Below, piece by piece: positions 1 to 25,619 of a stretch of 25,619 nt of DNA. The notes under the pieces are model-generated. The model saw nothing but the letters and a program-made list of their open reading frames with translations. It did no database searches and had not been told where the DNA came from. Numbering within the stretch: position 1 is the stretch's first letter; each line of letters opens with the position of its first letter. Origin of the DNA: Bugula neritina (Eukaryota > Animalia > Bryozoa); contig CAXIUT010000005.1 in assembly GCA_964035545.1 (NCBI GenBank), positions 1 to 25,619 on the forward strand, written 5' to 3'. A program made the translations under genes and the position numbers.

Positions 1-106
1 CCCAACCCCAACCCCAACCCCAACCCCAACCCCAACCCCAACCCCAACCCCAACCCCAACCCCAACCCCAACCCCAACCCCAACCCCAACCCCAACCCCA
101 ACCCCA
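1..106. repeat. Left telomere, (CCCCAA)n
   Basis: Perfect C4A2 hexamer array at the 5' end of the contig, the oligohymenophorean (Tetrahymena-type) telomeric repeat. Confidence 0.97.
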
Positions 107-2429: not shown

Positions 2430-2467
2430 TTTCTTAGAATTATATTATTTAAGATTATTTGAATTAG

Positions 2468-3489: not shown

Positions 3490-3692
3490 TTTGTTAAAAG
3501 ATATGACTTTATAAGTATAAATTAATCTACAAAATCTTTAGAAATATACTATTTATTTTATTTATTTCCCATTCTAAGATAAAAATGGTTGAATAGTGTT
3601 TTACAGATTGTTATATATATGAATAATATAAAATCAGATAAACTTCATGATTAAAGTAATTGTAATGAAATATGAGTATACATAATTAAATT

Positions 3693-4328
3693 ATGAGTTA
3701 GGAAAAATCAATTACTGTTGAGGTAACTTTTCACCCTTCTGCTAACCTTTAACTGGTTCTTCAGAACATCATCGACGACCATCCATGCGTCGATAACTTT
3801 TAAAAAACTTAAGAAAGTCAGTTACTAATAAGACTAGATTCGATTATTGATTTTCTAGATATCGATTTTATCCAGTCTTATGGAGCTATCTCTTGTAAAA
3901 TTGTCTCATAGAAGGTCTAAGATGAAGAAAACTCAAAGAAACCTGAAGATCTTTACTCAACTTTACATTAATCTGATGAGGAAAGCAGTTAATAATATCT
4001 GAATAGCCATCATTAACTATACTTATAAGGTTTAAACAATCTAAAAATGCCTCTTAAGTGTTAGAGACTAACTTCTCTTGAAGACTAACTGATTTAGTAA
4101 GAGAAAATAAAGGAATATTTTAAATTATATGACAGTGATAACAATCTAAACTGGTAAAAAAAATCAACAGAAGATGAATAGATCTATACCACTCTTGAAG
4201 ACGAATTGATAAAAGATGAATACTAAACCAAATAGACCGAAGGATGGATACCAATGATCGGAGGAATGGCAATGACTGCTATTTTGCTTGGAGGATACAA
4301 AGTTCTTAAACTAGCTTTTAATCAATGA
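3693..4328 (+). CDS. Acidic hypothetical protein with a C-terminal membrane anchor, copy 1, 211 aa
   Basis: Intronless frame from ATG3693 to TGA4326-4328, D/E-rich, ending WIPMIGGMAMTAILLGGYKVLKLAFNQ (tail-anchor-like). Intact in both duplicate copies. Confidence 0.75.
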
Positions 4329-4368
4329 TACTGTTTTTTAATATTTTCACTAATATAAATTTATTGAT

Positions 4369-5897
4369 ATGTCTAGCTGGTTTCTCTTCAACAAAAAACC
4401 AATGACCTATCTGACTAAGTTGATCTTAATCTGTATGCTTTCTACAACTGCGGTATCTATTGTGGACGCACTTCCGGGACTCTATACTGGTATTTGCTTT
4501 TCAATAAAGATCGGATATAAATATGGAGTACTACCGGTTCGAACAACCTATTCACAACAAATGGCTACAACTTCACTAAAACTTGGAGATAAAATCTAAC
4601 AAATATTCAAACTACAGCTCTACTACTTTATAACTTCAAAACGGCTCCTCAGAAAACATTGAGCTACAATGCTGAGATAGTAACATCAAATTAGAATTCA
4701 GCAATAATCAATATAAATCCCACCAGTACAGGCGGTGGTATAATATATCTAGCTTTTACTATTTTAGTAGTAACATAATCAAACCACTTTTTCTAGCTGC
4801 TTACCATCACCCAAACATCTCTAGATCCATCACTAACACAACACTAATTTAACAGTCAAAATTCAAGTTTATCACTAAGTAATATCAATCCAACAGTTAC
4901 ATCTTACTACCAATGGATAACAGCTTCATAAGCCAACTCATCATAAACCAGCATTAATTACCATAACTGGTTGGACGTCGAAATCGATTCCACCTTTACT
5001 TTTATCACTCTATTTCTAGATGCAAGCGATGCTGTGTATCTAACTGGATTTAAGGTGAACATATTGATTCTTGCCTCATAGGCCAATTCTACAACTATTC
5101 ATCAAACAAGAGTTGTATCATAGGATGGCGTTCAATAAGAATATAATTTTATTCATAATTTCGGAGTAGATTAATCTCTATACGGTAAACCTCTGGATAA
5201 ATACAACTGTATCATTGGATTAGATTTACTCGATATCTATCTGATAACTAATGCATAATCACCAAGTTCATATCTATTCACTATGGATAATGTATCCGAT
5301 GTCACTGCCACAGTTGATACATAAGTTGCATCAGTAAAGTTGATAACCATTTGCACAGGAGTACTATGCAGTCCTCGAACATATTATGATGATACAAATA
5401 AAGTATGTTCAACATCTGCCTGTCCCTATGATTGCTACTAGTGTTCGCAAAACGGATATTGCCTCTCTTGCAATACAACTACTGATTTTAGACAGCTTTC
5501 TGGCAATAGATGTGTTCCTATCACTGGATACTACTAGAGCGGCGTAACTGTGGCTGGCAAATGTCCAGATGAATGCGATATCTGTTTTAATTCTGTTCTC
5601 TGTGAGGAATAGAAAACATAATAATAGGATAGCAATTCTCTTTTTTTGTATATATTGATTGGTGCTGGAGGGCTACTAATCATCATAATAATAGTTATAG
5701 CTGTTTTAGTATGGAGATGCAAGAAGAATGAAAATAAAAAGGATAAAAAAGTGACAAATCAGGTTTAGTCTAGTAATAACATCAATACTATAGAAGAAAT
5801 CAATGGCAATAATGAAATTAAACCTGATTAAAATGCTATGGTCAAATAGCAACCATAAATTCCAATGGAATAAAGGGAACCTAATAGATCCCTATGA
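4369..5897 (+). CDS. Type I membrane/surface protein with a Cys-rich furin-like repeat, copy 1, about 502 aa, 20-nt intron 4490-4509
   Basis: Signal-peptide-like N terminus (start could be ATG4402), S/T/N-rich ectodomain, Cys-rich segment CPYDCYECSQNGYCLSC...RCVPITGYYESG...CPDECDIC, one TM helix (LFLYILIGAGGLLIIIIIVIAVLVW) followed by RCKK. Confidence 0.82.
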
Positions 5898-5958
5898 AAT
5901 TAAAGTGTTTGCTTTATCTTGATTTAATCTACATAATTATATAAATTATTTGAATTAG

Positions 5959-6980
5959 ATGTATATTTAGAAAGAAAAACTTACCATCACAGATTAGAAA
6001 GAACTCTTGGCTTTGTTCATAGATATCGAGTCAAGATGTATCAAGTTGTAGAACTTTGAAGATGCTGGCATGACTGTTGAAAATATGATATAGAAAATGA
6101 TGATTGTACTCCAATCTATCAAAGATATGCAGATGTTTTCAGCTAATGAAACCCTAAAAGAAGTTCATACTGAAATAATGAAGTAAAGTTTATAATATTT
6201 AGATTTTTGATTTTACCCTATCGATTGGGATGGCTTTATAGTCGTGTTAAAGAACCAAGAATGAAAGCTATTCTTTCAGAAAAAGATTTTCTTAATTCAT
6301 TCTTACAACTTATGCAGCAGTTTAGTTGCTAGGAGGAATAAATCTTTCCTAAAAACCTTCATAAAATGTGGTCAGCTCAACTACAAGAAAGATAATATAG
6401 ACCTCCTAGAGATGAATTAATTCAAGCTATGAAAGATAGAAAAACAGCCTAAAAAAGATATTAGAACTGGTAGAAAATAAAAGAATAAAGTTAAAAGCGT
6501 CAAGCTATCAAAGATTACATCACTATTCAGATTCATGAAGCTATAACAATGCTTCGTCATATCTAATAGGAAATAGACATTCTAAAATACAAAGATTCTA
6601 TTCAAAAAGATCAATAAGCCAAAGAAAAACATTAAAATGAAATGAATAAACCTATTCCTAAGATGAAAGTTTGGCAAATTCCTCCAAAAGATGTTATTCA
6701 GCAATACATGTGTCCATCAGAACAGAGAAAAGATTTTGTTGCTAAAGTATGGCAATAAAATGCAAACAAACCTACCATGACTCTTGAAGAGGTAGGTCAG
6801 ATGGAAATAGACAATGCTGAATCTAGAGCAAAGAGATAAGCCAAACAGAGATAAGAGAATTGGGTTGATACAGATAGTGATAAAGAGGAAAATGATGCAA
6901 GAATGAAGAAAGAAGCTGAAAGTATGGCATATTGGAAAGATAATCATCAAAAAGGAGCAGGCAACCTTAACAGACATTGA
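5959..6980 (+). CDS. TAP42: TAP42/alpha4-family protein, copy 2, 333 aa, 20-nt intron 6183-6202
   Basis: Colinear with 2468-3489, only scattered substitutions, same motifs and stop. Confidence 0.88.
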
Positions 6981-7183
6981 TTTGTTCAAAGATATGACTT
7001 TATAAGTTTAAATTAATCTATAAAATCTTTATAAATATACTATTTATTTTATTTATTTCCCGTTCTAAGATAAAAATAGTTGAATAGTGTTTTACAGATT
7101 GTTATAAATATGAATAATATAAAATCAGATAAACTTCATGATTAAAGTAATTGTAATGAAATATGAGTATACATAATTAAATT

Positions 7184-7819
7184 ATGAGTTAGGAAAAATC
7201 AATTACTGTTGAGGTAACTTTTCACCCTTTTGCTAACCTTTAACTGGTTCTTCAGAACATTATCGACGACCATCCTTGCGTCGATAACTTTTAAAAAACT
7301 TAAGAAAGTCAGTTACTAATAAGACTAGATTCGATCATTGATTTTCTAGATATCGATTTTATCCAGTCTTATGGAGCTATCTCTTGTAAAATTGTCTCAT
7401 AGAAGGTCTAAGATGAAGAAAACTCAAAGAAACCTGAAGATCTTTACTCAACTTTACATTAATCTGATGAGGAAAGCAGTTAATAATATCTGAATAGCCA
7501 TCATTAACTATACTTATAAGGTTTAAACAATCTAAAAATGCCTCTTAAGTGTTAGAGACTAACTTCTCTTGAAGACTAACTGATTTAGTAAGAGAAAATA
7601 AAGGAATATTTTAAATTATATGACAGTGATAACAATCTAAACTGGTAAAAAAAATCAACAGAAGATGAATAGATCTATACCACTCTTGAAGACGAATTGA
7701 TAAAAGATGAATACTAAACCAAATAGACCGAAGGATGGATACCAATGATCGGAGGAATGGCAATGACTGCTATTTTGCTTGGAGGATACAAAGTTCTTAA
7801 ACTAGCTTTTAATCAATGA
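7184..7819 (+). CDS. Acidic tail-anchored hypothetical protein, copy 2, 211 aa
   Basis: Almost identical to 3693-4328. Confidence 0.75.
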
Positions 7820-7868
7820 TATTCAATGATACTGTTTTTAATATTTTCACTAATATAAATTTATTGAT

Positions 7869-9421
7869 ATGTCTAGCTGGTTTCTCTTCAACAAAAAACC
7901 GATGACCTTTCTGGCTAAGTTGATCTTAATCTTTATGCTTTCTACAACTGCGGTATCTATTGTGGACGCACTTCCGGGACTCTATACTGGTATTTGCTTT
8001 TCAATAAAGATCGGATATAAATATGGAGTACTACCGGTTCGAACAACCTATTCACAACAGATGGCTACAACTTCACTAAAACTTGGAGATAAAATCTTAC
8101 AAATATTCAAACTACAGCTTTACTACTTTATAGCTTCAAAACGGCTCCTCAGAAAACATTGAGCTACAATGCTGAGATAATAACATCCAATTAGAATTCA
8201 GCAATAATCAATATAAATCCCACCAATACAGGCGGTGGTATAATATATCTAGCTTTTACTATTTTAGTAGTAACATAATCAAACCACTTTTTCTAGCTGC
8301 TTAGCATCACCCAAACCTCATTAGATCCATCACTAACACAACACTAATTTAACAGTCAAAATTCAAGTTTATCACTAAGTAATATCAATGCAACAGTTAC
8401 ATCTTACTACCAATGGATAACAGCTTCATAAGCCAACTCATCATCAACCAGCATCAATTACTATAACTGGCTTGTCGCCGATATCGATTCAACCTATACT
8501 TTTGTCACTCTATTTCTAGATGCAAGCGATGTTGTCTATCTAACTGGATTTAAGGTGAACATATTAATTCTTGCCTCTTAGGCCAATTCTACAACTATTC
8601 ATCAAACAAGAGTTGTATCATATGATGGTGTTCAATAAGACTACAATTTTACTCATAATTTCGGAGTTGATTAATCTCTATACGGCAAACCTTTGGATAA
8701 ATACAACTGTATCATCGGATTAGATGTACTCGATATCGATCTAATAACTAATGCATAATCACCAAGTTCATACCTATTAACAATGAGTGGATCTGATGTC
8801 ACTGGTACAGTTGATACCTAAGTTGCCGCAGTATAGTTGATAACCATTTGCACTGGAGTACTATGCAGTCCTCGAACATACTACGATGATACAAATAAAG
8901 TATGTTCAACATCTGCCTGTCCCTATGATTGCTACTAGTGCTCACAAAACGGATATTGCCTCTCTTGCAATACAACTACTGATTTTAGAGAGCTTTCTGG
9001 CAATAGATGTGTTCCTATCACTGGATACTACTAAAGCGGCGTAACTGTGGCTGGCAAATGTCCAGATGAATGCGATATCTGTTTTAATTCTGTTCTCTGT
9101 GAGGAATAGAAAACATAATAATAGGATAGTAATTCTCTTTTTTTGTATATATTGATTGGTGCTGGAGGGCTGCTATTAATCATAATAATAATAGTTATAG
9201 CTGTTTTAGTATGGAAATGCAAAAAGAATAAAAATAAAAAAGATAAAAAAGTGAAAAATCAGGTATAGTCTAATAATAATATTCATACTATAGAAGAAAT
9301 CAGTGGCAATAATGAAATTAAACCTGCTTAAAATGCTATGGTCAAATAGCAACCATAAATTCCAATAGAATAAAGGGACCCTAATAGACCCTATGAAATT
9401 AACCTATTTCCTTCATCTTGA
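7869..9421 (+). CDS. Cys-rich type I surface protein, copy 2, about 510 aa, 20-nt intron 7990-8009
   Basis: Same architecture as 4369-5897. Ectodomain is more diverged and the C terminus runs on to ...RPYEINLFPSS-TGA (9419-9421). Confidence 0.82.
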
Positions 9422-10576: not shown

Positions 10577-10719
10577 CTAACGACACTATTATAATATATT
10601 ATTTATTATTGTTGATTTAGATATTTACCTATGAATGATTAATATAAGCAGATAGATTCAATAAATATCATTAGAGTTTAAAAACTATGTAAAAGAATTA
10701 TGATTTAATTACTTTTTAA
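10577..10719. promoter_or_regulatory. Putative bidirectional promoter
   Basis: 143 bp AT-rich spacer between two divergently oriented start codons; inferred from geometry only. Confidence 0.45.
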
Positions 10720-13700
10720 ATGTAAGATATATCTCTGCTTCCCTCCTGGGATCCAGAATAACATACTGCCGCTCTACTCAAAACCCCCCTAGAACAAAAA
10801 ACACTCAAAACAAAACTAGATAAAATCTATCAAATCAGTTCCTACAATGAACTCGAATACGTTGACTAAGTTCTCGACGCATATATCTGGATCAGATTAA
10901 CTCATTAGTATCCAGAATCAGAAAAGTTTTTTGCCACTGAAAAAGCCCACAAGTGGTTCTTCTAGGAATTCATCAGCACATCTATCCGCTACATGATCAT
11001 ATGCCGAAGGTTCCAGAATCTAGTGATGATGGTCCTCACTCAACAAATGATGGTTGAAGCTTTAAAACTCTATTCTAAAAGATTCGACTTGCTGGACAAA
11101 TACCCAAAAACAAACAATATCCTAAAAATAGTGTTCGAATTCGATAAACAATTCTACAAACTCAACTACATCAACAACCACCTCCACCTACCCACCAGTC
11201 CATCATCATAAACCCTATCAAATAATGATGATTTCATTGCCACTTTAAAACCTGACATGAAAGTTGATATTATCAAAATAGATCCTCACTCTAGAAGGTT
11301 TTCTTGGCTGCCTGGTCTTATCAAAAAAATAACATCTATCAATGTACATGTAGTACCATAAAATGATAAAACTATCTATCCTTTTGAAAAGAAAATGATG
11401 TATGTCTATCCCCATGGCTCCATGAAAAACAAATATTAATGGAGATATACCCTCGCTAAGGGAGATAAAGTTGATTTCCAAGATAATAGGTCTTGTTGGG
11501 TCGAAGCTACTGTCAGCGATATCAGAGCTGAGTAACTAGATCCATAAGGACAACATGTTGAGTTGTAGCTGTCCTGGGATGAACAGAGCTAGTGGATTGG
11601 ACAGTGTGATACAAGAATACAAGCCCATGGGACTTTTTCTAATGGACCTTGCAACATATCAAGAGGAATGGCATAAAGCTATCTCGATGATTTCAATGAT
11701 ATGCTTCTAGATCCATAAATGAAAAGTATTGGAGTAATCAGATATGAATACTGTCGCTCATAAATGCTGATAGAACTTATCAATTATGTCAACAAAGATT
11801 TGAATCTCTTTGAAAGAGTACTAGAAGCTATTCAAAATAGAAAATTTGGAATTGAAGCCACAGCTGATCTAGTTGCCTGCATTTCACAGTTACATCCTCT
11901 TTTGCATCGGAAATTTGCTTTAAGTTATCTCAGTAGGATGTCTGAAGTACTCTTGGAATATGTTACTAAAGCTGATGATATTACTATAAGAAACTTCACC
12001 AAATAGAGATTTGAATCAGTTAACAGTGCATTGACTGAGTTCCTAAAAAGAGTAAAATCTTCAGCTCAAAGAAAAGCAGTCTGTGAATAACTCCAACTAT
12101 GTCTATCAATCAGATTCCTTGAATCAGACTTTTTAGATAGAAAGCTCTATGCTGTTACAATCATAACTAGTTTATTGAAACAAAGTAAGCACAAGGCACT
12201 TAAGCGATCTTTCGATGAGTTGATTGATTGGATCAGAGATAAGAAGGTACTAAATTGTATTTATAATTAGAAATCACATTCTTAGTTGATTTCTCGATCA
12301 GCAGATCTACTTCAATATTTCTTACTCTCACATCCTACTTTTGATTAGTTGTTACCTCTTTTAGAATGGAACTAATATATTCTTAAGTTGTTGAATGAAT
12401 GCTACTAATACTTCCCTGAAAGTTTCAGATAGTAGCTAGTCAAAAGAATAAAATCAAGAAAAAACGTCAAGAATAAAGATGCCATAGATATAGTAAAGAG
12501 GACATTGGGATGTGAGTTATGGTTATTATAAAATGGCGGATAATGTTGGGTTTCAGTAATAAGAGATAAAATGAAAAGAAAAGCTGATATAGCTTAGGTA
12601 TTCAAATGTCCATTTCCTGTTGTTGATAAAATAACAAAGTAAGTTTCACAAATTAACTAATGTAAATTCAGAACCTAATATTTCTTATTACTACATGAAG
12701 CTAACTATCTATCTATTGTACTTAAAAATTAAAATCTACCATTTCTGGAAAGAGTACAATTTGCTGCCTTAGCTATTGAACCTTTCTCTAAAATTAAAGA
12801 TTAACTCTTCCAAGCCCTAGCTCCTTATACTCTCAAAATTGATTAACTACCTATTTAGGCACAAAATTTCTTTATCTCAGTATTGCCTAAAATAAGTTCT
12901 CAAAATGTATCACAACTATTCAAAGAAAACTTCAGTTAATAATAAAAACTAAAAAGTATGGGTAGTGGTCAATTCGAATTATTCAAAAGTTGTTTCCTTA
13001 GAGTTAATGAAGAAGAACGTCTGATAGATCGAAGAATAGTTAGTGTATATCCCACTGCTCATTCTTATCGTAAATAAAGAAAATAAATTTTGACTATTAA
13101 AGCTAATCCTAATCAATTGATGGGTATGAGTGAGTTGATGATTGTTGTTTTTGGAAGTGCCAATATGAAAGTCACACAACTTAGTTTATAATTTATTGGG
13201 TTCTTGTTTTAACATCTATCGCCTTAACTCGCTTCTAGTGTGCTTACTTTTAGAACTACTTTTCTTGAAAATTGTCTCAGTAAGTTGTATTAATCAACTT
13301 CTCATCAGTAAAAATATCTCAGAATTATCGAAGGTATCCTTGATTAATCATAAAAAGCAGGTATTGATGCAGAACCATCAGTTAGTTCACTATTCATTAC
13401 TCAAAGTTTAACTCTCAAGTTAGTTGATCACTTCAATGTTAATAAATCAAGATCATTGCTTGAAGTATCAGCCAGTTTAACTCTCCATTAACTTAGAGGA
13501 TAGATCTCAAGACATCTAAATGCATATCCTCATGAAGTCAAATTGCTATTAGGAGATAAATAACTTGATCCAAGAATGAATGGAAGAGTCATCCACACTT
13601 TAGGTTTAACTAATATGTAGCTAACAGCTGAAAAAAGAGTAAGTGTTGATAAAGTAAATCTAACTGAGACGGATGGTAGTTTAACTGAAAAGTGCAAAGA

Positions 13701-16700
13701 CGTTCTTAAAAGAATATTCAGATAGTTTAGTCAGATGGGATTGATGAGCAAACCTCAATGTCAAAAATATCATCAACGTTGTGTAGGATAGGTAAGTTCA
13801 ATGAGTGAAAGTAAGGTAGATAAAATCTATTAGAGCTACGATACTGATAAAGATGGATATTTAACAGAAGATAATTTCTTATCATTTTATGCTCATTCTG
13901 CAAAAACAAGATAAAGTACAGTTTGGAATAATCTTGAAACTTTTGGCATCAGAAATGATCTAGAAGATCTTACTCAACTTGATATCGAGTATCCTAATCC
14001 AGATTCTTTGATAAGACATCTTCTATTCAATAACAAACATTTCATGTCTCTGCTCATTAAACTTTTGCAAAGCGATGATGATAAATTAGCACTGACTGCT
14101 TGGAGAGTTGCAAGTCGATTGCCTATACTTCCTTCTGAGACTTTCTTTGCATAAAATGGAAATATAATGAAACCTTTGCTTTTCAGATATTGGCTTTTTG
14201 AAGTTATTTCCAGTAGTAGCTGGTAACTACTAAGTGCTGAAGTACTTGAACGCATTTTAAACTCATAAATATAGACAACATGTATTGGTCTTAGAGCAGC
14301 TATCAACAGTCCTAACTTCTAAGCTTAAACTTTTGACAAAATATTGAATAACTTGAAGAAATTAAATATTCACAACCAGCTATCATTCCATTCTCAGGTA
14401 GTTCTTGACAATACATTGAGGATATTATAGTGGTTATTGAGGGAAAATGAGGGAATAAGAAAGTACTATTCTTAGAAATATTCATAATATGCTCCATTAT
14501 TGGCTGCAGGCCTGATGAGTAAAAATATGGTAATAAGAAAGATGTATTGCTAGGCTGTTAAAAATATATTAGTCTAATCTGCTTCGAACCATATTGAAAT
14601 ATTTGAACCATTCTTTATGTTGGTTTATGGTAATTTCTAAAAATGTGATAAATCAACTCTATCCTTCTAATACTTTGATCTTTACTCAGAACTGCTATAA
14701 ATATTGAAATTGCATCAATAATTGCTACCTAAATTAGAACTCAACTGGTTGATTCTTACACAAAGCATGATTTCTCTCTTTTTGGCTCATAAATCAACTG
14801 AAGCTGGCCTGAATTCTCCTCCAGATCAAGTTGCCCAGGGATATCTTCGCATTCTAAGAAAAATGTTAAATGATAACACTTTACCTCACATGGTTCCTTT
14901 GGTTAAATTTTTATTCCAACATTCTTTGTTCCCTGATTCAGGTCAAAACAAATTAAAAAATAGTAAATCAAGAAAAGAAGGTTATTAACTCTTACATACT
15001 ATTTGTGACATGCGTGACGGAGATGGTGATTCCCCAGGATTGAAAGAACTATTTTCCGCAGGTTTCAAAAGTGTATACAAGAAGATGTCGTCAAATAAAA
15101 CATCAAGTTACAGTTTCTCATATTTCTATAGCTACAACTAGGCTCGTTCTTAGCTAGGTTATGCAGGAATACGTAATCTTGGTTGCATATGCTATATGAT
15201 ATCAATGTTACAGCAACTATTCATGACACAATCTTTCAGAAGTCTAGTTATGATGGCATAAGATGGCCAGCCTGAATGTTTAGTAAAGAAAGGTACAAAA
15301 GAAGTAGATGATAATTTGTTCCATCAACTACAAAATCTATTTTCTAACTTGACTCTAACATAAAGACAAGAGTACAATCCTGATTAGTTTTGTTTTGCTT
15401 TCAAAGATACAGATGGACAACCAGTCAATGTCTCAATTCAACAAGATGCACAATAGTTTTTAAACATTTTCTTTGATAGAATATAGACTCCATTGAAGGA
15501 AACTCCCTTCAAACATATAGTTGAAGATATATTTGGTGGAAAGACATCAAATCAAACCCAATGTTCGAATTGCAAAGCAATAAACTAAAGATTATAAAAC
15601 TTTTATCCTTTATCTCTATAAATAAAAGGCATAAAAAGTATTTACGAATCATTGACTAAATTAATTCAAGGAGAAGTAATATCAGATTATCAATGTGATG
15701 CATGTAATAAGAAAGCAGATGTAACAAAGAGTTGTTTGATATCAAAGGTACCTAACTATTTTATAATCCATCTTCAAAGAATATGTTTTAACTATGATAA
15801 ATTCTAAAACTAAAAAATCAATTCTAAATTTTAATTTCCACAAAATCTTAATGTCTACAATTATACTACAGATAAACAAAAAAATAAAGGCAATGCTGAT
15901 GATTATTAATTTACATTAAAAGGTATTGTACTACACTATGGCAGTGCATAATTTGGACACTATTTTAGTTATATCAAAGAATCTTAAAATAAATGGATCT
16001 AATTCAATGACTAAAGAGTTCGATAATTTGATCCTAGTGATATTTAGGCTGATTGTTTTGGTGGATAAAATTGGAGAAGGTAAAGTCAAAGCGCTTATCT
16101 ATTAGTTTATTAGAAAGTTAAAAAAGTACCACTCAGATTATAATTTAATTCAACTTAACAATAAAATACTATCATGAGGAATTTTGGATTAAAAGATGCC
16201 ATCTATGTTCCACCTCTCAAAATGGAAGAATAATAAACAAGAAATTAGTTCAATGAGTAACTTCTATAAAAAGAAAAGATGGTTTAATAGAAATAAAAGT
16301 AAATCGAGAAGGGATAGTAAAGCTAGAATAAATAAAAATAAGCATAAAAGAAGATAATAGTAGAATTAGATCCTAATATCATACCAACATATATATCAGA
16401 ATAGCAACAAAATAAAATATCAAAAGCTAATGAATAATTCAGTTTTACTCTCAATTTGTCTAATGATTAATTTGCACATTTCCTACATAAAGTATTAACC
16501 ATTGATCCGCCTTAACAACTGACTACATAATTTTTATAATTATGCTATGAATGTTTCAACCTTAGAACTATGGTCGATGATGGCTAAGGTCTTAGTTTGT
16601 CTGAATGGGCAGCCAGAAGGTTCAAACAAATTATTGGAGGTCATGGCTGGGAGTTTCTTAAATCTTTTGGACAAAATTGGTAAGCAGATATCCTATCAAT

Positions 16701-18402
16701 TGAACGATCTACCAGAGTTGGTGTTAAAAATTTGTTACAATGCGTTATCACTGATATCATCAAAACTGCTCAAAAAGAAGAGGATTCAACTGAAAAAGAT
16801 CAACTTGTTAAAAACTTCCTATAAAAATATACTCTTATGTTGAACAGTGAAGTAGGCAAGAACTGGACCCGCTTCCGTGAGTATTTCTAGGTATGGATAA
16901 CTCTTATCCAAGATTCTTCAACAGTTCAACAATGGTGTTCAGACATAAAAATGGTATAAAGACTATTAGATTTCATAATGTAATAATATTCACCTTTTTC
17001 TAGAGGACATAAAAGATTTTCATTGAGAAATATGCATTATGGAGCATAATTCGAATATCCCTTGGAAATGTTGACATTATTACTTAAATAAAATTATCAA
17101 GTATCTGATGGATAAAAGAAATGTATGAGACATTATGCCTTCATGGAAAAAGCTATCAAATATCCTACCGATTTGAACATGGTTTAATATCTATGTAAAA
17201 ATGATCGCCCACTTTCATAAAAATTTGCTTATCTCATCTTAGTTTAAACAAGTAAAGTGACTCAAAGTGACGAAGTAAAACCAATTATTTCTACTATCCA
17301 TCGTTTTGTTGAGATAAAAGATTAATTCCAAGAGATGAGACTTAGCTGGCTAATCGGATTCCCTCAAGCAGTCTAGAATCCTAGAACTACATCATATGGT
17401 ATCTATGGCATTTACCCTGATCAAGATACTATCGTCAACTTCATTTCACCCATAAGAGGCCAACCACTGACCCAACAACTTATTAAATTCAAAAACAAGA
17501 TGCAACATGTAGCAGCTTTACTCTTCTCGATGTTTTTGCAATTATAAGCCGATGGATTTATTTAAAATCTTGATAGCTATCCAGGCATTTTTGCATTTGC
17601 AACCAATTTTACATGTTGGGGACAACAATTTGTCGATTCGTATTTTGAAGATACACATCGATCATATACGACCAAGTATTATACTTAGTACGGAGATAGG
17701 TTGAAGGCTTTGTGGGAGGGAAGACCTGGTCGACCTTATGAGAAATATCCTTTGTATTTGGTTGGAAAGACTGTATCTAGAGAGACAGTTAAAGAAGTTC
17801 AAGCTAGTGAGCTATTATAAGTAGAGTATATTGATATAACTTCTAAGATATTACTAATGACATAATAAAATTCATTTTTGAATAAGAGAAATATAAAGAA
17901 CTTTGCTGGTAGTTAAGATTTCAAGGTGAAATTGAACAGTCCTTATGGAGGTGCAGGATATCTTAACATCAATATTGATCGTAGTAATCTATCTAGTGAT
18001 GATGAATAGCCTCAAGACAAGCCATCTAACAATCCTTTTGATAAGGTATTCCAAGGCATACTATTTCGTCGCATTGTTATCAAAAACTTATCATGTTAAA
18101 ACCTTTTGATGATCGGTACAATTAAATCAACAGCTCCTAAACCTAACTTTGAACCAGCTAATATCTAGACTAGTTTCTAGATCAAGGGAGAATCATCATT
18201 TGTTATTACTCTAAAGAAACACAATATTGAGTAACCTTTGGGTGATTTGACATTGTAGTTGAAGATGCTAGGAGCAGCTACTAAGGAAGGATACTGGCCA
18301 AGACAGCTGATAACTGAAATACCACAGCAAGCGCATAATTAAGAAGAAGGAGATAGTTCTGACAACGAACAAGAACCATCAACCAATTCATGGACTATCT
18401 GA
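10720..18402 (+). CDS. Large ubiquitin-specific protease (peptidase C19, USP9X/USP24/USP34-like), 2560 aa, intronless
   Basis: Single 7683-nt frame ending in TGA. Cys box GIRNLGCICYMISMLQQLF (catalytic Cys 15190-15192), QQDAQEF, two CxxC pairs, His box LKGIVLHYGSAEFGHYFSYIK, KWIEFND and SAYLLVYE. Confidence 0.95.
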
Positions 18403-18468: not shown

Positions 18469-18551
18469 TTGGGGTTGGGGTTGGGGTTGGGGTTGGGGTT
18501 GGGGTTGGGGTTGGGGTTGGGGTTGGGGTTGGGGTTGGGGTTGGGGTTGGG
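18469..18551 (+). repeat. Internal telomeric tract 1, (TTGGGG)n
   Basis: Perfect G4T2 array of 83 nt, 66 nt after the USP stop, ending TTGGG one base before the first tRNA-like gene. Confidence 0.93.
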
Positions 18552-18552
18552 A

Positions 18553-18654
18553 GACACTGTGGCCGAGCGGTTAAGGCGTATCATTTTAAAAACGTATTCA
18601 ACCTTTTGGATGATAACTTAAAAAAGTGCGTGGGTTCAAATCCCACCAGTGTCT
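18553..18654 (+). tRNA. Class II tRNA-like gene 1 with a 27-nt anticodon loop/insert (nominal anticodon UUA; identity uncertain)
   Basis: Acceptor GACACTG/CAGTGTC, A box TGGCCGAGCGGTTAAGGC, anticodon stem TATCA/TGATA, variable arm ACTT/AAGT, T arm GTGGG-TTCAAAT-CCCAC, then a T5 run (18654-18658). Confidence 0.8.
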
Positions 18655-18785
18655 TTTTGACATCATCTATTCATCATATCTATAATCCAAATATTAGTAA
18701 TTATAGACTGTAAAGCTAAGCAAAGAATATATATTTTTGATGGTTAGCTGAGATAGAGTTAAAAATAAGAGAAAAAAGTAAGGAA

Positions 18786-18899
18786 GACACTGTGGCAGAG
18801 CGGTTAAGGCGTATCATTTAAAAATTAACAGAAGAGGGCTGCAAAGCTTTTAGATGATAACTTACAAAAGTGCATGGGGTTCGAATCCCATCAGTGTCT
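18786..18899 (+). tRNA. Class II tRNA-like gene 2 with a 38-nt anticodon loop/insert (nominal anticodon UAA)
   Basis: Same body as gene 1. T stem ATGGG(G)/CCCAT has a compensatory pair plus one extra G, the D stem has one mismatch, T5 run at 18899-18903. Confidence 0.75.
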
Positions 18900-19023
18900 T
18901 TTTATCTATCTTTAACTATTTAGATAATTTATCCATTCTTTTTAAAATAGATTAAAGAAAGATTTATCATTTTTTATGAAAACCAAAAAGTATTTTTGTT
19001 TACTTGATAAACTATTATGGGAA

Positions 19024-19135
19024 GACACTGTGGCCGAGTGGTTAAGGCGTATCCTTTCGAAATAAATCGATGAAGGCTGTCCGCGCCCAATTGGATAGCT
19101 TCAAAAGTGCGTGGGTTCGAATCCCACCAGTGTCT
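19024..19135 (+). tRNA. Class II tRNA-like gene 3 with a 38-nt anticodon loop/insert (nominal anticodon UCG)
   Basis: Same body. Anticodon stem TATCC/GGATA (compensatory change), variable arm GCTT/AAGT, perfect B box GGTTCGAATCC, T5 run at 19135-19139. Confidence 0.8.
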
Positions 19136-19198
19136 TTTTAATCAATATTAAATCTTCTCAATAAAACATAATTTTTTACCAAAAACAACTATGAAATA

Positions 19199-19951
19199 TC
19201 ACTGAGTCCAACTCCACATTAACAGGGCGCCAAATCCTATCATTCCTCCGACAAATCCAAATACATATGCATATAGAATAATCTTATTCTTCTCTCCAAT
19301 ACACTTTCCAATCCACAGACAATGATGACTGAAATCTTAGCAGCAAAGATTGCATATTTAACAGTGATAAGTCAAGTTGTCAACATGCGTGCTGCATATT
19401 TTGCAAAGAGTTGAAGATGATTGAGCGCTATTGGAAGAACGAGGTTGAGTGTATCCTGGGTTCGAGAAGCATAGGATTGTTAGGAAAGTTACCTGGTAGA
19501 TCATCCAGATTAGGCAGTAGTAAATTATGATCTCATCTACTCCCAATAAACACTGCAAATATACCAAATTAGATTTTCCACTAAAATTTTTAAAGCCTAT
19601 ATTGTCATTATTGCTATTTTTGCAATTCGGCTGGATCTTTGGCAAGATGACCATACCCAATGTTCCTGTTAATACTACACAGATGCTCAAAATAAATGCC
19701 AAATTGCCCAGATAGTATTTATACCATCCTTTTTGAAGTGTCATCCTTGGAATCATGGTGTCTTTATGCGAGAAGAGAGGTATGACTGTTCCCCAATGGA
19801 TAGATGGTTGTTCTGGAATGCTGGCAGCTGTTGGAGGAGCAGTAGATAGGTTGGAGGAGACTGGCATGCAGTACTAGAGTTTTTAACTGGGATCATGTTC
19901 AGGAAATTCTCCTTGTATTTCTTCCGAATGGATTGAAGGACGTTTAAACAT
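19199..19951 (-). CDS. DHHC-family palmitoyltransferase-like protein with an SHHC variant motif, 250 aa
   Basis: Two N-terminal TM segments, SNPG motif, Cys-rich domain CKICSTHVDNLTYHCEICNLCCEDFSHHCLWIGKCIGEKN, then one TM segment and TGA. Confidence 0.85.
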
Positions 19952-20007
19952 TTTTAGAAATCGAATATGAGTAAATCAAGAAATAGGTATAATATTAAAA
20001 TTTAAAT

Positions 20008-20097
20008 GGGGGTTGGGGTTGGGGTTGGGGTTGGGGTTGGGGTTGGGGTTGGGGTTGGGGTTGGGGTTGGGGTTGGGGTTGGGGTTGGGGTTGGGTT
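20008..20097 (+). repeat. Internal telomeric tract 2, (GGGGTT)n
   Basis: About 90 nt G4T2 array between the divergent DHHC-like and arrestin start codons; the last unit is GGGTT. Confidence 0.93.
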
Positions 20098-20111
20098 ATA
20101 ATTTAAAAAAC

Positions 20112-21263
20112 ATGGGTTCTTCTTTGAACAACGACTCAAGTGTTCAGATCTTCTTGACTACATCTAAAAGGATGTACTATGCAGGCTAGACAGTAGAAGG
20201 AGCAGTCCATATCAACTGCACAGACAACAGACTTTACCATACTCTACGCCTCAGAATTTAAGGAAGATAGTAAGTCCATTGGACCGAGCAACATGGATCA
20301 GGAAAACATAGGCGTACAGTCCACTACCGCAACAGCAAAGATACTTACTTCCACTAATTTGACTTGGCCAAGTTTCCTGGTGGAATACAACTAGGTCATT
20401 ATAGTTTTCCTTTTACCCTGCAACTACCAACAGCCTTTCCTTCTAGCTTCAAATACAATGTAAGTAACTACATTCAATACTATCTATCTCCTTACTTGCC
20501 TGGATACGATGGAGACAGTAGAAATCAGATGTTTAGAAAATCTTTACATATAAGATAACCAGTTAGAGGAACAGGATAGAATGTTAAAGGAGATGGTTAT
20601 AGTTAATCTTTATGCTGTGGATGTTGCTGTAGTGGAGGTATCGTTAATTTGCAATTGCTAATAGATCAGAATCATCTTGAATACAACAAAACTTTCAGGG
20701 TAATGGGAGTAATAGATAATTCAAGTAGTCAGTCTCCAATCAAGAACTTTAAAATTACAATTCGATAAAAAGTAAAATTAATAGCAGCTGGAGGCAAACA
20801 AAGAAATTATTCTAATGATACTCTTATCTATGACTCTTTGAAAGGAGTTTAGATAGGCATGAAGGATTAGTTCAATAGCTAAGTTATTGTCCCTCCTTAG
20901 GTTTTAGGTTACACTGCTATTGGTAGCATCATATCCAGATCATATTGTCTTGCATTGATAGCTGAGGTTAAGTGTTGCTATACTAATCCTCAAATAGAAG
21001 TACCAGTCGTTTTAAATTCAATTAACTAGCCTTAATTCTAAGAAAGTGAACAACAAATGCCTCCCGATCTATGGAATCCAGTCGTTGCTCAACCTCTATC
21101 TTTTGTCAATTTGAAACCTTACATCTACCAACCAATGCCAGGAATAGGAGTGAAAAATCAGGAAGGAATGGCAGTGATGGGTCAAAACTAGATGATGCAC
21201 CAGATGCCAGGAAATAATATGATGTAACAAGCTGAGATGACCAATAATTATATGGGATATTGA
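20112..21263 (+). CDS. Arrestin-domain (alpha-arrestin-like) protein 1, 383 aa
   Basis: Arrestin_N motifs YYAGETVEGAVHI, IEGREEVHWTE and GHYSFPFTLQLPTAFPSSF; N-terminal MGSS; CCGCCC cluster. Confidence 0.88.
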
Positions 21264-21411
21264 TCACATCAATTTAATAATATGATTAATTTTATAAAAA
21301 ATTATTATTAAATAAAATTCGTGAAATGAACCTCATATCTGAAGATATTTTTTTTTATTTTATCAAAGACATTATCAAAGATTAATTGATTGGTCATTAT
21401 ATCTAAATTCT

Positions 21412-22572
21412 ATGGGAGCATCTTTAAACCCATCCATAAACAATGACCCAAATATTCAAATATTTCTAACAACAGCTAAAAGAGTTTACTACGCAGGTTA
21501 GACAGTCTAAGGAGCAGTCCATATCAACTGCACAGATAACAGGCCTTACCATACTCTACGCATGAGAATATAAGGAAAATAAAAAGTTTAATGGAGTTAA
21601 TAACATGGATCTGGATAACATACTTATACAGTAACCTACTACAATGATAGAGATTCCTATTTTCATTAATTCGATCTAGCACAGTTCAATGGAGGAATAC
21701 AACTAGGACATTACAGTTTCCCCTTTACTCTTCAACTACCTACAGCTTTTCCCTCGAGTTTCATCTATAACTTCCAAAATTATATACAATACTACCTGTC
21801 TCCCTACTTGGCTAGCTACGATGGAAGCAGTTCTAACCAGATGTTCAGAAAATCTCTGCATATCAGATAACCAGCTAGAGGAATGCTGACTAATGTTAAA
21901 GGAGATGGCTACAGCTAATCACGATGCTGTGGATGTTGCTGTAGTGGAGGTATTGTTAATTTGGGCTTTTAAATCGATCAGAATCATCTTGAGTATAATA
22001 AGACTTTCAGGATGATGGGAGTAATAGATAATTCAACTAGTTAGTCACCAATCAAGAACTTTAAAGTTGTGATCAGGTAGATAAACAAAATGATCTAAAG
22101 TGGAGGTCATCAAAACAATTCTTTTCGATAAACTCTTATCTATGATTCTCTTAAAGGAGTTTAAGCAGGAATGAAAGATTCCTTTTCAGCTGAAGTCATT
22201 GTACCTCCAGAAGTAATAGGGTATACTGCTATAGGCAATATTATATCAAGGACTTATTATCTTGCATTGATTGCTTAGGTCCAATGTTGCTATTCTAATC
22301 CTCAAATACAAGTTCCAGTGGTTTTGAATAGCATCAATTAACCATAGATATAATCAGGATAGTAAGTGCTCCCTCCTGATTCTTGGAATCCAGTCGTTGC
22401 CCAGTCTCTATCTTTTGTCAACTTGAAACCTTACATCTACCAACCAATGCCAGGAATAGATGTTATAAATCAGGAAGGAGTGGCAGTAATGGGTCAAAAC
22501 TAGATGATGCACCAGATGCCAGCAAATAACAACACTACAAAACATGTAGAATCATACCAAATGTAATATTGA
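21412..22572 (+). CDS. Arrestin-domain protein 2, 386 aa
   Basis: Colinear paralog of 20112-21263 with the same motifs, open to TGA22570-22572. Confidence 0.88.
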
Positions 22573-22604
22573 TTTATTTCTCTATAATAAATTTAATATA
22601 TCTC

Positions 22605-23743
22605 ATGGGTTCATCACTAAATAAAGACGAAAACATCTAAATTTTTATGACTCTTGACCAACGTATGTACTTTGCTGGGTCTACCGTTAAAGGTGTCGTT
22701 CATATCAACTGCAAAAGCTAAAGACCCTATCGCTACCTTAAAATAAAAATATAAGGTTAAATTAATAAGTATTGTGGAGTGAACACTACGGACAGCATTC
22801 CCATGTAACATACCACAACTCAAGACAAAGTTACATTCATGAATTTGATTTGGCAAAATTCGATTTAGGAATACAAAGTGGTCACTACAGTTTTCCTTTT
22901 ACTTTGGAGCTACCAAATGCCTTTCCTTCCAGTTTCAAGTATGACTTCGCCAACTATATTAAATACTAGATATCTGCTTTTCTTCCTCTATATGACTAAA
23001 AAAGTTCAGACCAGGTCTACAAACGTTCCTTACATATCAGAGAACCTCCAAGAGCTATTACTGGCAATTTGAAAGGATAAACTACAAGTGAGTCACAGTG
23101 TTGTAACTGTTGCTGTAGTTGTGGAGTGACTAGTTTGTACTTGTAAGCTGATGTGACACATATTGAATACAATAAAAATTTCCATGTAAGAGGAAGAATC
23201 GATAGTCGTATGAGCAAAGCAGATATAAAAAATTACAAAGTAGTCCTGAGATAAATAGTTAAACTTGTATCTAGTGTAGGTCGTTGTCAAACTCATTCCA
23301 CAGACACCCTACTCTATTAGTCTCAAAAGTCTCTTTCTGTTGGATAAAATGATCAATTCCAAGCTGAAGTCAAAGTTCCATAAGGAGTTATCGGATATAC
23401 AGCTATTGGCAACATCCTCTACCGGGCTTATTTCTTAACTCTCATAGCTGAAGTAAGTTGCTGCTATTCTAATCCTAAAATTGAATTACCAGCTGTCTTG
23501 AATACATCTTTGTTGCCTGACTTTTAGGATGGAGAGGAAGAGCAACCACCAGTTGGTTGGAATCCAGCAGTTGCTCAATCTTTATCTTTTGTTAACCTTA
23601 AACCATACATCTATGCACCTGAAAATGAGATAGATGTAAATAATCAAAATGGAAAAGCTGTAATGGTATAAAACTAAATGATGCAAAAAATGCCTGCAAA
23701 CCAACCAATGAATCAAACAGATATTACTTTGCAGACTCTATGA
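22605..23743 (+). CDS. Arrestin-domain protein 3 with an apparent frameshift near 22758-22762
   Basis: Homology to paralogs 1 and 2 runs in one frame up to GGT22755 and continues in the +2 frame (EEVLWSE...GHYSFPFTLELPNAFPSSF) to TGA23741-23743. Confidence 0.72.
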
Positions 23744-25563: not shown

Positions 25564-25619
25564 GGGGTTGGGGTTGGGTTGGGGTTGGGGTTGGGGTTGG
25601 GGTTGGGGTTGGGGTTGGG
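25564..25619. repeat. Right telomere, (GGGGTT)n
   Basis: G4T2 array at the 3' end, with one GGGTT variant unit, ending TTGGG. Confidence 0.96.

What the first reader, a model, noticed from the sequence alone, without database searches (positions are those of the whole stretch)
18553..19139. Array of three tRNA-like genes with a fixed class II body and hypervariable inserts in place of the anticodon loop
Seen: three head-to-tail genes spaced 233 and 238 nt apart, with unrelated spacers. They share the acceptor stem GACACTG/CAGTGTC, A and B boxes, a 4-bp variable arm and a T5 run. Stems covary (anticodon stem TATCA/TGATA vs TATCC/GGATA; T stem GTGGG/CCCAC vs ATGGG/CCCAT; variable arm ACTT vs GCTT against AAGT), which points to selection on structure. 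The 7-nt loop is replaced by 27, 38 and 38 nt of largely different sequence, with nominal anticodons UUA, UAA and UCG. Established: eukaryotic long-arm tRNAs are Ser (G73), Leu (A73) or Sec, and SerRS ignores the anticodon. Here position 73 is U and one body carries three unrelated anticodons. Inference: an undescribed family of tRNA-derived Pol III RNAs, either a natural tRNA scaffold displaying variable cargo or guide sequences, or mismatched-identity tRNAs analogous to nematode nev-tRNAs and bacterial allo-tRNAs.
Basis: partly seen in the sequence, partly recalled or inferred. Interest (0 to 1): 0.88.

Follow-up and report, generated by a model that had tools for sequence, protein, structure and literature searches.

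The report
Ciliate long-arm tRNA genes, shifting anticodons
Three neighbouring genes in a ciliate contig are real, intron-containing long-arm tRNA genes that share one body ending in an unusual U before the CCA end but carry three unrelated anticodons, and the same family turns up in related ciliates from metagenomes, so it may be a natural case of tRNAs whose anticodon and amino-acid identity do not match.

Summary
Rfam calls three tRNAs at 18553-18654, 18786-18899 and 19024-19135 (52.6, 36.2 and 50.0 bits). They share the acceptor stem, U73, a long variable arm, compensatory stem changes and a T5 run.

The "hypervariable inserts" are most simply ordinary anticodon loops interrupted by introns of 20, 31 and 31 nt at the canonical 37/38 site. 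That gives anticodons UUA, UAA and UCG. No RNA data exist, so splicing is inferred.

- **Host organism.** It is a peritrich-type ciliate with TTGGGG telomeres, UAR = Glu and UUR = Leu.
- **Other class II tRNAs.** The same assembly holds ordinary tRNA-Ser with G73 and a tRNA-Leu(AAG) with A73, so U73 marks a third class II type.
- **Copy number.** The assembly holds only these three copies.
- **Relatives.** Sequencing runs of three studies and four metagenome contigs, at least one from another UAA = Glu ciliate, carry tandem relatives. These have the same acceptor stem, U73, a conserved motif at -65, and anticodons UAA, UGC, UCC and UCA.
- **Selection.** Exons are conserved, while introns and spacers drift.

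Best reading: a conserved ciliate family of U73 class II tRNAs prone to anticodon shifts. The UAA members probably read leucine codons, and the others are mismatched paralogues resembling nematode nev-tRNAs. Amino-acid identity and expression are untested. The guide/scaffold idea finds no support.

The parts
18553..18654 (+). g1: class II tRNA gene, U73, nominal anticodon UUA (18586-18588), T-loop TTCAAAT
   Evidence: Rfam tRNA 52.6 bits; segments parsed. ARAGORN with introns gives the alternative Leu(UAA) in a +1 register.
18590..18609 (+). g1 intron, 20 nt, at the canonical 37/38 site (inferred)
   Evidence: Position and length. One strain variant, 18593 C>T.
18786..18899 (+). g2: class II tRNA gene, U73, anticodon UAA (18819-18821). 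It has an A12.G23 mismatch in the D stem and an extra G in the T stem in this assembly only.
   Evidence: Rfam tRNA 36.2 bits. The extra G is left out in runs X1 and X3, and no difference is listed at A12 (18797) in X1 or X3.
18823..18853 (+). g2 intron, 31 nt (inferred)
   Evidence: Strain variant 18837 G>A. No antisense match in the assembly.
19024..19135 (+). g3: class II tRNA gene, U73, anticodon UCG (19057-19059), with the compensated anticodon-stem pair C31-G39
   Evidence: Rfam tRNA 50.0 bits. ARAGORN with introns calls Arg(UCG) with a 31-nt intron. Found unchanged in run X1.
19061..19091 (+). g3 intron, 31 nt (inferred). It contains UCGA, complementary to anticodon plus A37.
   Evidence: Strain variant 19082 C>T. 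No antisense match in the assembly.
18654..18658 (+). T5 run directly after position 72 of g1. Its first T is position 73. The same holds at 18899-18903 and 19135-19139.
   Evidence: Ordinary tRNA genes of the assembly have N73 followed by TTTTT. The family has C72 followed by TTTTT.
18721..18740 (+). Upstream motif CAAAGAAT..TTTTT at -65 of g2
   Evidence: The same motif lies at -65/-66 of all four metagenome family genes, and not at that place in ordinary tRNA genes.
18953..18975 (+). Upstream motif TAAAGAAAGAT..TTTTT at -71 of g3, a variant of the same element
18471..18552 (+). Internal GGGGTT tract that ends two bases before g1 (one A lies between its last G and +1), so g1 has no upstream motif

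Best explanation
**What it is.** The array holds three real tRNA genes of a peritrich-type ciliate (UAR = Glu). They belong to a conserved, lineage-specific family of class II (long variable arm) tRNAs with a fixed acceptor stem and U at the discriminator position.

**How it most likely works (inferred).** RNA polymerase III uses the internal A and B boxes, probably helped by a family-specific element at about -65, and stops in the T5 run that starts at position 73. The 20-31 nt surplus in the anticodon arm is an ordinary intron at the 37/38 site. The tRNA splicing endonuclease removes it, leaving 7-nt loops with anticodons UUA, UAA and UCG.

**How the family evolves (shown).** It changes by tandem duplication and anticodon shifts. 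Every organism sampled keeps a UAA member, while other slots carry UUA, UCG, UCC, UGC or UCA.

**Likely roles (inferred).**
- The UAA members serve UUA/UUG leucine codons.
- The UUA and UCG copies are anticodon-shifted paralogues. They either carry the family's amino acid, most likely leucine, to UAA (Glu) and the rare CGA (Arg) codons at a low level, or they are poorly charged. This resembles nematode nev-tRNAs.

**Shown versus inferred.** Shown: gene structure, covariation, U73 against A73/G73 in the same assembly, cross-organism conservation, the genetic code, and drift of introns. Inferred: transcription, splicing, charging and use in translation.
For: - **Three tRNAs.** All three score above the Rfam threshold. 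RNAalifold on seven members gives a cloverleaf of 26 pairs, 5 of them with compensatory double changes.
- **Selection on exons.** Exons are 86-92% identical while introns and spacers are near shuffle level. Strain variants: exon 2/246, intron 3/82, spacer 9/255.
- **Loop anatomy.** All eight members have U32, U33 and U34; 7 of 8 have a purine at 37. The surplus is 11-31 nt and lies at 37/38.
- **Family beyond the window.** Four metagenome contigs each carry a tandem pair. Outside the variable arm and anticodon loop, their U73 members differ from g1 at no more than 3 positions; L061-B is identical. Their upstream motif lies at -65/-66.
- **A fourth paralogue.** Contigs of runs from two studies show a fourth paralogue that reads UCC.
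- **Genetic code of the carriers.** In the window, TAA and TAG align mainly with E, and TTA and TTG with L, in paralogue alignments. In L061, TAA sits at sites where 67/69, 40/69 and 46/63 homologues have E.
- **U73 is a third type.** tRNA-Ser(UGA) and tRNA-Ser(GCU) have G73, and tRNA-Leu(AAG) on C213 has A73.
- **UAA members recur.** A UAA member is present in all three organisms: g2, L060-A and L061-B. L061-B has G37, as leucine tRNAs do.
- **Published context.** A73 is conserved in tRNA-Leu of all life, and all 115 nev-tRNAs have it (PMC3333845).
Against: - **No RNA evidence.** No RNA run holds the locus, so transcription and splicing are unproven.
- **Splicing motifs are weak.** No strict bulge-helix-bulge motif is present. 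The anticodon-intron pair (a purine three nt before the 3' splice site, able to pair with U32) is possible in 6 of 8 members, but not in g1 or g2.
- **U73 argues against leucine.** It departs from the A73 that leucyl-tRNA synthetases need wherever tested.
- **The body also resembles serine tRNAs.** The acceptor GAYAYUG is like Ser(UGA), the variable arm is like Ser(GCU), and one metagenome relative has G73.
- **g2 is the weakest copy.** The UAA member of this window has an A12.G23 mismatch in its D stem.
- **g1 looks harmful if used.** A UUA anticodon charged with anything but Glu would misread the commonest Glu codon (TAA, 180 of 437 Glu-type codons).
- **The register is not proven.** ARAGORN reads g1 as Leu(UAA) in a shifted register.
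- **The tRNA set is incomplete.** The ordinary Leu(UAA), Arg(UCG) and Glu(UUA) genes could neither be shown nor excluded.
Confidence: 0.55

Rival explanations
1. One chassis, many identities. Each member is charged by the synthetase that reads its anticodon (ArgRS for UCG, GlyRS for UCC, a leucyl enzyme that reads A35/G37 for UAA). U73 acts as an anti-determinant that keeps the seryl and leucyl enzymes off a long-arm body.
For: U73 is neither the Ser (G73) nor the Leu (A73) letter found in the same assembly. Arginyl and glycyl enzymes rely mainly on positions 35 and 36 (established knowledge, from memory). The body is kept intact around different anticodons.
Against: The UGC member has C3-G70, not the G3.U70 that alanine charging needs. 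No long-arm tRNA for Arg, Gly or Glu is known in eukaryotes. An ordinary class I tRNA-Ala(UGC) exists in the assembly.
Confidence: 0.12
2. Non-canonical splice sites or a shifted register give ordinary anticodons, so the genes are plain Leu and Ser tRNAs.
For: ARAGORN reads g1 as Leu(UAA), L061-B as Leu(CAA) and the G73 relative L061-A as Ser(CGA) when the intron position is left free. In L061-A the canonical register leaves an odd C37.
Against: The shifted register needs two bases between the D and anticodon stems, fails for g3 (its stem cannot shift), and gives AAA for g2 (my reading of the segments). g3 reads UCG in every register. No bulge-helix-bulge motif supports any alternative site. 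U73 still fits neither Leu nor Ser.
Confidence: 0.1
3. Decaying tRNA-derived copies (pseudogenes or SINE-like repeats) without function, at least for g1 and g3.
For: Only three copies occur in the assembly. g1 has lost the upstream motif to a telomere tract. g2 carries stem defects. Anticodons misfit the body.
Against: Compensatory changes occur in four helices. Exons vary about four times less than spacers between strains. In other organisms whose spacers are unrelated, the U73 members differ from g1 at no more than 3 positions outside the variable arm and anticodon loop; L061-B is identical there.
Confidence: 0.08
4. Unspliced tRNA-like RNAs that display the insert as cargo or guide.
For: Inserts differ fully between copies, while the body and an 8-bp extended helix (positions 32-34 pairing with the last two intron bases and position 38) are kept in most members.
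Against: Inserts change at the spacer rate between strains. The g2 and g3 inserts have no antisense match with up to 3 mismatches in the 216-Mb assembly. The shortest surpluses are only 11-12 nt. The first six insert bases keep the anticodon-loop pattern.
Confidence: 0.05

Closest known systems
Nematode nev-tRNAs (Hamashima et al. 2012, PMC3333845)
   Same: A class II body with a long variable arm carries anticodons of amino acids other than Leu or Ser. Both families are conserved within one lineage and hold several anticodon types on one body.
   Different: All 115 nev-tRNAs have A73 and are leucylated in vitro; here position 73 is U. Introns lie at 37/38 here, and the nev-tRNA paper reports none. 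The host is a ciliate with UAR = Glu. One member reads a reassigned stop codon. Charging is untested.
Ordinary intron-containing eukaryotic tRNA-Leu(UAA)/tRNA-Ser genes
   Same: The cloverleaf, the A and B boxes and the GGTTAAGG D loop are shared; the host animal's own tRNA-Leu(UAA) has the same D loop. The long arm, the intron one base after the anticodon and the T-run terminator also match.
   Different: U73 replaces A73 or G73. One acceptor stem is shared by anticodons UUA, UAA, UCG, UCC and UGC. The terminator starts at position 73. A family-specific motif lies at -65.
tRNA anticodon shifts (tRNA gene remolding) in eukaryotic genomes
   Same: Paralogues differ mainly at positions 35-36. 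Between the metagenome organisms, the UAA anticodon sits in a different array slot.
   Different: Shifts from a class II body to class I anticodons are rare. Here they recur and are kept with compensatory changes.
Bacterial allo-tRNAs and tRNA-Sec
   Same: A long-arm, Ser-related body carries unusual anticodons.
   Different: Those have 8/4, 9/3, 9/4 or 8/5 acceptor/T-stem geometry, and tRNA-Sec has G73. Here the geometry is the normal 7/5. Position -1 is not conserved, so there is no eighth pair.
Ciliate stop-codon-reading tRNAs (Glu-type tRNA(CUA) of this genome; Leu-type tRNA(CUA) of phyllopharyngeans, PMC11687900)
   Same: g1 has an anticodon that reads a reassigned stop codon. A precedent exists for class II stop-codon readers in ciliates.
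   Different: Here UAA means Glu, not Leu. The UAG readers found in this assembly are class I with a Glu-type T arm. g1's body does not fit that meaning.

Membership tests
tRNA (Rfam RF00005) | Covariance-model score above the gathering threshold over the full model | tested here: met
   52.6, 36.2 and 50.0 bits against a threshold of 29, model positions 1-71.
tRNA (Rfam RF00005) | Pol III type 2 gene layout: A box, B box and a T-run terminator | tested here: met
   TGGCNGAGYGG, GGTTCRAATCC and T5 are all present.
Eukaryotic intron-containing tRNA | A single intron between positions 37 and 38 | tested here: inconclusive
   The position fits: U33 in all members, a purine at 37 in 7 of 8, and 11-31 nt of surplus. 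No RNA data are available.
Eukaryotic intron-containing tRNA | Anticodon-intron pair and a 3-nt bulge at the 3' splice site | tested here: inconclusive
   A purine able to pair with U32 lies three nt before the 3' splice site in 6 of 8 members, but not in g1 or g2. No strict bulge-helix-bulge motif is present.
tRNA-Leu | Discriminator A73 | tested here: not met
   U73 in all three genes. The assembly's tRNA-Leu(AAG) has A73.
tRNA-Leu | Leucine anticodon on a long-arm body | tested here: inconclusive
   Met by g2 (UAA) only. g1 reads UUA and g3 reads UCG.
tRNA-Ser | Discriminator G73 and a serine anticodon | tested here: not met
   U73 and no serine anticodon. The assembly's Ser(UGA) and Ser(GCU) have G73.
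tRNA-Sec | 13-bp acceptor plus T domain (9/4 or 8/5), anticodon UCA, G73 | tested here: not met
   The geometry is 7/5. Position -1 varies (A or U), so there is no eighth pair. Rfam's clan competition kept tRNA, not tRNA-Sec.
nev-tRNA | Class II body with a non-Leu, non-Ser anticodon | tested here: met
   g1 (UUA) and g3 (UCG). Relatives carry UCC and UGC.
nev-tRNA | A73 and leucylation by LeuRS | tested here: not met
   Position 73 is U. Leucylation cannot be tested with these tools.
Peritrich UAR-reading tRNA-Glu | Class I Glu-type body with a UUA or CUA anticodon | tested here: not met
   g1 is class II. The assembly's tRNA(CUA) genes at C10:16818 and C256:3992 are class I with a GGGTTCGATTCC T arm.

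The most novel reading that the evidence does not exclude
UAA = Glu ciliates keep a third kind of long-arm tRNA, marked by U73. Its anticodon is free to change, giving UAA, UUA, UCG, UCC, UGC and UCA on one body. Either one synthetase, possibly a dedicated paralogue, charges all members regardless of anticodon, so the cell has built-in low-level recoding of several codons ending in A, including the reassigned stop UAA. Or the body serves as a universal chassis charged according to its anticodon.
Probability: 0.22. Interest if true: 0.85.

Novelty: new variant of a known kind. Interest (0 to 1): 0.66.

Why it matters
The rule that eukaryotic long-arm tRNAs are Leu (A73), Ser (G73) or Sec has one known exception, the nematode nev-tRNAs, and those still obey A73. 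A second, independent family would therefore be informative. This one occurs in ciliates that have already reassigned stop codons, has a discriminator used by neither Leu nor Ser, and has anticodons that keep shifting.

Such a family would give a natural system for three questions:
- how tRNA identity is decoupled from the anticodon;
- how codon reassignment starts;
- whether cells tolerate or use low-level mistranslation.

If the mundane reading holds (a leucine tRNA with an odd discriminator plus drifting copies), it still shows that A73 is not universal for tRNA-Leu(UAA).

Tried and rejected
- **ARAGORN without introns.** It finds no tRNA in the window; intron mode was needed.
- **More copies in the assembly.** Three pattern searches (5' half, D arm plus anticodon stem, T arm plus 3' acceptor) found only the three genes.
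- **Fetching ciliate contigs for a full tRNA list.** I did not try to get around it. Only short pattern matches were used afterwards.
- **RNA evidence.** No RNA run holds the locus. The four runs laid are contigs of unknown library type, so they say nothing about expression.
- **Strict bulge-helix-bulge search.** No motif is shared by the members.
- **Guide hypothesis.** The g2 and g3 introns have no antisense match.
- **Class I tRNA(UUA) search.** None was found and only tRNA(CUA) appeared. A search keyed on a Glu-type D arm gave noise equal to its control.
- **Other collections.** The viral contig scan gave one chance hit with no tRNA. The scan of bacterial and archaeal genomes gave nothing.
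- **Literature.** A search for the sequences returned only unrelated primer matches.
- **Protein atlas on the L061 gene.** It gave the family (glycoside hydrolase 31) but no useful taxon.
- **8-bp or 9-bp acceptor stem (Sec-like or allo-like).** Rejected, because position -1 is not conserved.

Full report
**1. Setting**

The window is contig C14 of a 216-Mb, 321-contig assembly. Its large contigs belong to an animal host, and many small contigs belong to a ciliate.

- C14 starts with CCCCAA repeats and ends with GGGGTT repeats.
- It has two internal GGGGTT tracts in the same orientation, at 18471-18552 and 20009-20092.
- Other small contigs (C10, C11, C15) show the same layout.
- Long reading frames exist only when TGA is the sole stop. 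In 4749 codons of the window's long frames there are 180 TAA and 75 TAG, against 140 GAA and 42 GAG.
- In alignments of the window's own paralogues, TAA faces E 13 times and TAG 12 times. TAG faces E 5 times. TTA faces L 13 times and TTG faces L 17 times.

The organism therefore uses UAR = Glu, the peritrich code, and UUR = Leu. CGA is rare (15 of 4749 codons).

**2. The observation**

Rfam finds three full-length tRNAs at 18553-18654, 18786-18899 and 19024-19135, scoring 52.6, 36.2 and 50.0 bits against a gathering score of 29.

- acceptor GACACTG/CAGTGTC and T at position 73;
- a D arm of the GGTTAAGG type and a 4-bp variable arm;
- A and B boxes;
- five T directly after position 72;
- inserts of 27, 38 and 38 nt between the anticodon-stem strands.

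Two pairs changed on both sides: 31:39 (A-U to C-G in g3) and 49:65 (G-C to A-U in g2). Exons are 86-92% identical. Introns are 41-56% identical (shuffles average 41-46%), and spacers are at the shuffle level.

**3. What the inserts are**

In the canonical register, one base (G26) lies between the D stem and a 5-bp anticodon stem. Each insert then reads U32, U33, three anticodon bases, position 37, a surplus, and position 38. The surplus is 20, 31 and 31 nt in the window, and 11, 11, 12, 15 and 23 nt in relatives. That is the position and size range of eukaryotic tRNA introns.

- **Variation between strains.** Contigs of public runs from three studies differ from the window at 2 of 246 exon positions, 3 of 82 intron positions and 9 of 255 spacer positions. 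One of the two exon differences removes the extra G that spoils g2's T stem. The surplus therefore drifts like spacer, which fits an intron and not a guide.
- **No targets.** The g2 and g3 introns have no antisense match with up to three mismatches in the assembly.
- **Weak points.** No strict bulge-helix-bulge motif exists. The anticodon-intron pair is possible in 6 of 8 members, but not in g1 or g2. RNAalifold prefers to pair positions 32-34 with the last two intron bases and position 38. No RNA run holds the locus.

Splicing is therefore inferred from anatomy only.

**4. The family is wider than the window**

The assembly holds only these three copies.

Run contigs from two studies show a fourth paralogue. 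It has the same first 34 bases, then CC, so it nominally reads UCC. Its intron is different and its upstream sequence is not telomeric.

One scan of metagenome contigs found four contigs (L060; L061-L063, three near-identical copies of one locus). Each carries a tandem pair:

| Gene | Acceptor | Position 73 | Anticodon | Position 37 | Intron |
|---|---|---|---|---|---|
| L060-A | GACACTG | U | UAA | A | 12 nt |
| L060-B | GACACTG | U | UGC | A | 11 nt |
| L061-B | GACACTG | U | UAA | G | 11 nt |
| L061-A | GGCGCTG | G | UCA | C | 15 nt |

L061-A is a diverged relative. Its acceptor has one compensatory pair change, and C at position 37 is odd.

- Outside the variable arm and anticodon loop, L061-B is identical to g1, and the other two U73 members differ from it at 1-3 positions. 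Spacers and introns are unrelated.
- RNAalifold on seven members gives a cloverleaf with 26 pairs, 5 of them with compensatory double changes.
- A motif [C/A/T]AAAGAAT followed by a T-rich stretch lies at -65/-66 of g2 and of all four metagenome genes. It lies at -71 of g3. It is not at that place in eight ordinary tRNA genes of the assembly.
- g1 lacks the motif because the telomere tract ends two bases before it.
- The L061 organism also reads UAA as Glu. In its glycoside hydrolase 31 gene, TAA sits at sites where 67/69, 40/69 and 46/63 homologues have E.

**5. Identity**

The same assembly contains tRNA-Ser(UGA) and tRNA-Ser(GCU), both with G73 and no intron. A small contig, C213, carries a tRNA-Leu(AAG) with acceptor GTAGAGG, a GGTCTAAGG D loop and A73. 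I did not confirm that C213 belongs to the ciliate.

U73 is therefore a third state among the long-arm tRNAs. Ordinary tRNA genes here have N73 followed by TTTTT. The family has C72 followed by TTTTT, so its position 73 is also the first T of the terminator.

The body has both Ser-like and Leu-like traits:

- **Ser-like.** The acceptor GAYAYUG resembles Ser(UGA), the variable arm resembles Ser(GCU), and one relative has G73.
- **Leu-like.** The D loop is the one the host's own tRNA-Leu(UAA) has. A UAA member is kept in all three organisms. L061-B has G37.

TTA and TTG make up about 4% of codons and clearly mean Leu. A conserved UAA member charged with serine would be very costly. If the family has a single identity, leucine is therefore the better guess. 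Against this, A73 is needed by leucyl-tRNA synthetases wherever tested and is conserved in all nev-tRNAs (PMC3333845).

The UAG readers I could find are class I with a Glu-type T arm (C10:16818, C256:3992). No class I tRNA(UUA) was found.

**6. Alternatives**

- **Shifted register or free intron site.** This turns g1 into Leu(UAA), L061-B into Leu(CAA) and L061-A into Ser(CGA). It breaks the one-base D/anticodon-stem junction, fails for g2 and g3, and leaves U73 unexplained.
- **Pseudogenes.** This fits g2's defects and g1's lost upstream motif. It does not fit the compensatory changes or the cross-organism conservation.
- **Scaffold or guide.** This is disfavoured by the intron drift and the absence of targets.
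- **Anticodon-driven charging on one chassis.** This cannot be excluded, but it fails for the UGC member, which lacks G3.U70.

**7. Verdict**

The genes are best read as intron-containing class II tRNA genes of a conserved ciliate family with U73 and shifting anticodons. The closest analogue is the nematode nev-tRNAs, but this family fails their defining A73.

Function in translation is unproven. I score it as a new variant of a known kind, of fairly high interest. Direct tests are tRNA-seq, charging assays and proteomics.

Noticed in passing
window 1-105, 18471-18552, 20009-20092, 25581-25619; also G000 C10, C11, C15: Contigs start with CCCCAA repeats and carry several internal GGGGTT tracts, all in the same orientation, each followed directly by new unique sequence with no CCCCAA tract. 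Simple end-to-end joining of minichromosomes would give paired tracts. The cause (alternative telomere addition, real interstitial tracts, or an assembly effect) is open. A diverged run contig continues past 20007 with non-telomeric sequence.
   Followed up: partly
L061:9068-9166 (-), also L062 and L063: A long-arm tRNA gene with G73, related to the family, has the nominal anticodon UCA with C at position 37 and a 15-nt surplus. It is either a UGA reader on a Ser-type body or a Ser tRNA with an intron at an unusual site (ARAGORN says CGA).
   Followed up: partly
G000 C10:16818-16847 (+) and C256:3992-4021 (-): Two class I tRNA genes have anticodon CUA and a Glu-type T arm. They are the likely UAG = Glu readers. 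No UUA counterpart was found in the assembly, although TAA is 2.4 times commoner than TAG in frame.
   Followed up: partly
window 18873-18876: g2 has a run of four G where runs X1 and X3 have three. The extra G would make an 8-nt T loop. This is probably a homopolymer error or a strain variant.
   Followed up: yes
runs X1, X2, X4, not in G000: A fourth family paralogue (nominal anticodon UCC, different intron, non-telomeric upstream sequence) is present in other samples but absent from this assembly.
   Followed up: partly
window 2330-5894 and 5820-9418: A tandem duplication of about 3.5 kb carries three reading frames in nearly identical copies.
   Followed up: no
window 19971-23740 (+): Three diverged tandem paralogues encode a cysteine-rich protein (CCGCCCS motif) with many in-frame TAA and TAG. 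I used them to read the genetic code.
   Followed up: partly
window 19202-19975 (-): A DHHC-type palmitoyltransferase-like frame has SHHC in place of DHHC. It shares the 1.5-kb telomere-bounded segment with the tRNA array.
   Followed up: no
window 10639-18399 (+): One open frame of 2587 codons has 109 TAA and 41 TAG in frame. It ends about 70 bases before the internal telomere tract.
   Followed up: no
G000 C214:41188-45349: A dense cluster of at least 11 tRNA genes includes a long-arm tRNA-Tyr, so it is of organellar or bacterial type. It is unrelated to the finding.
   Followed up: no
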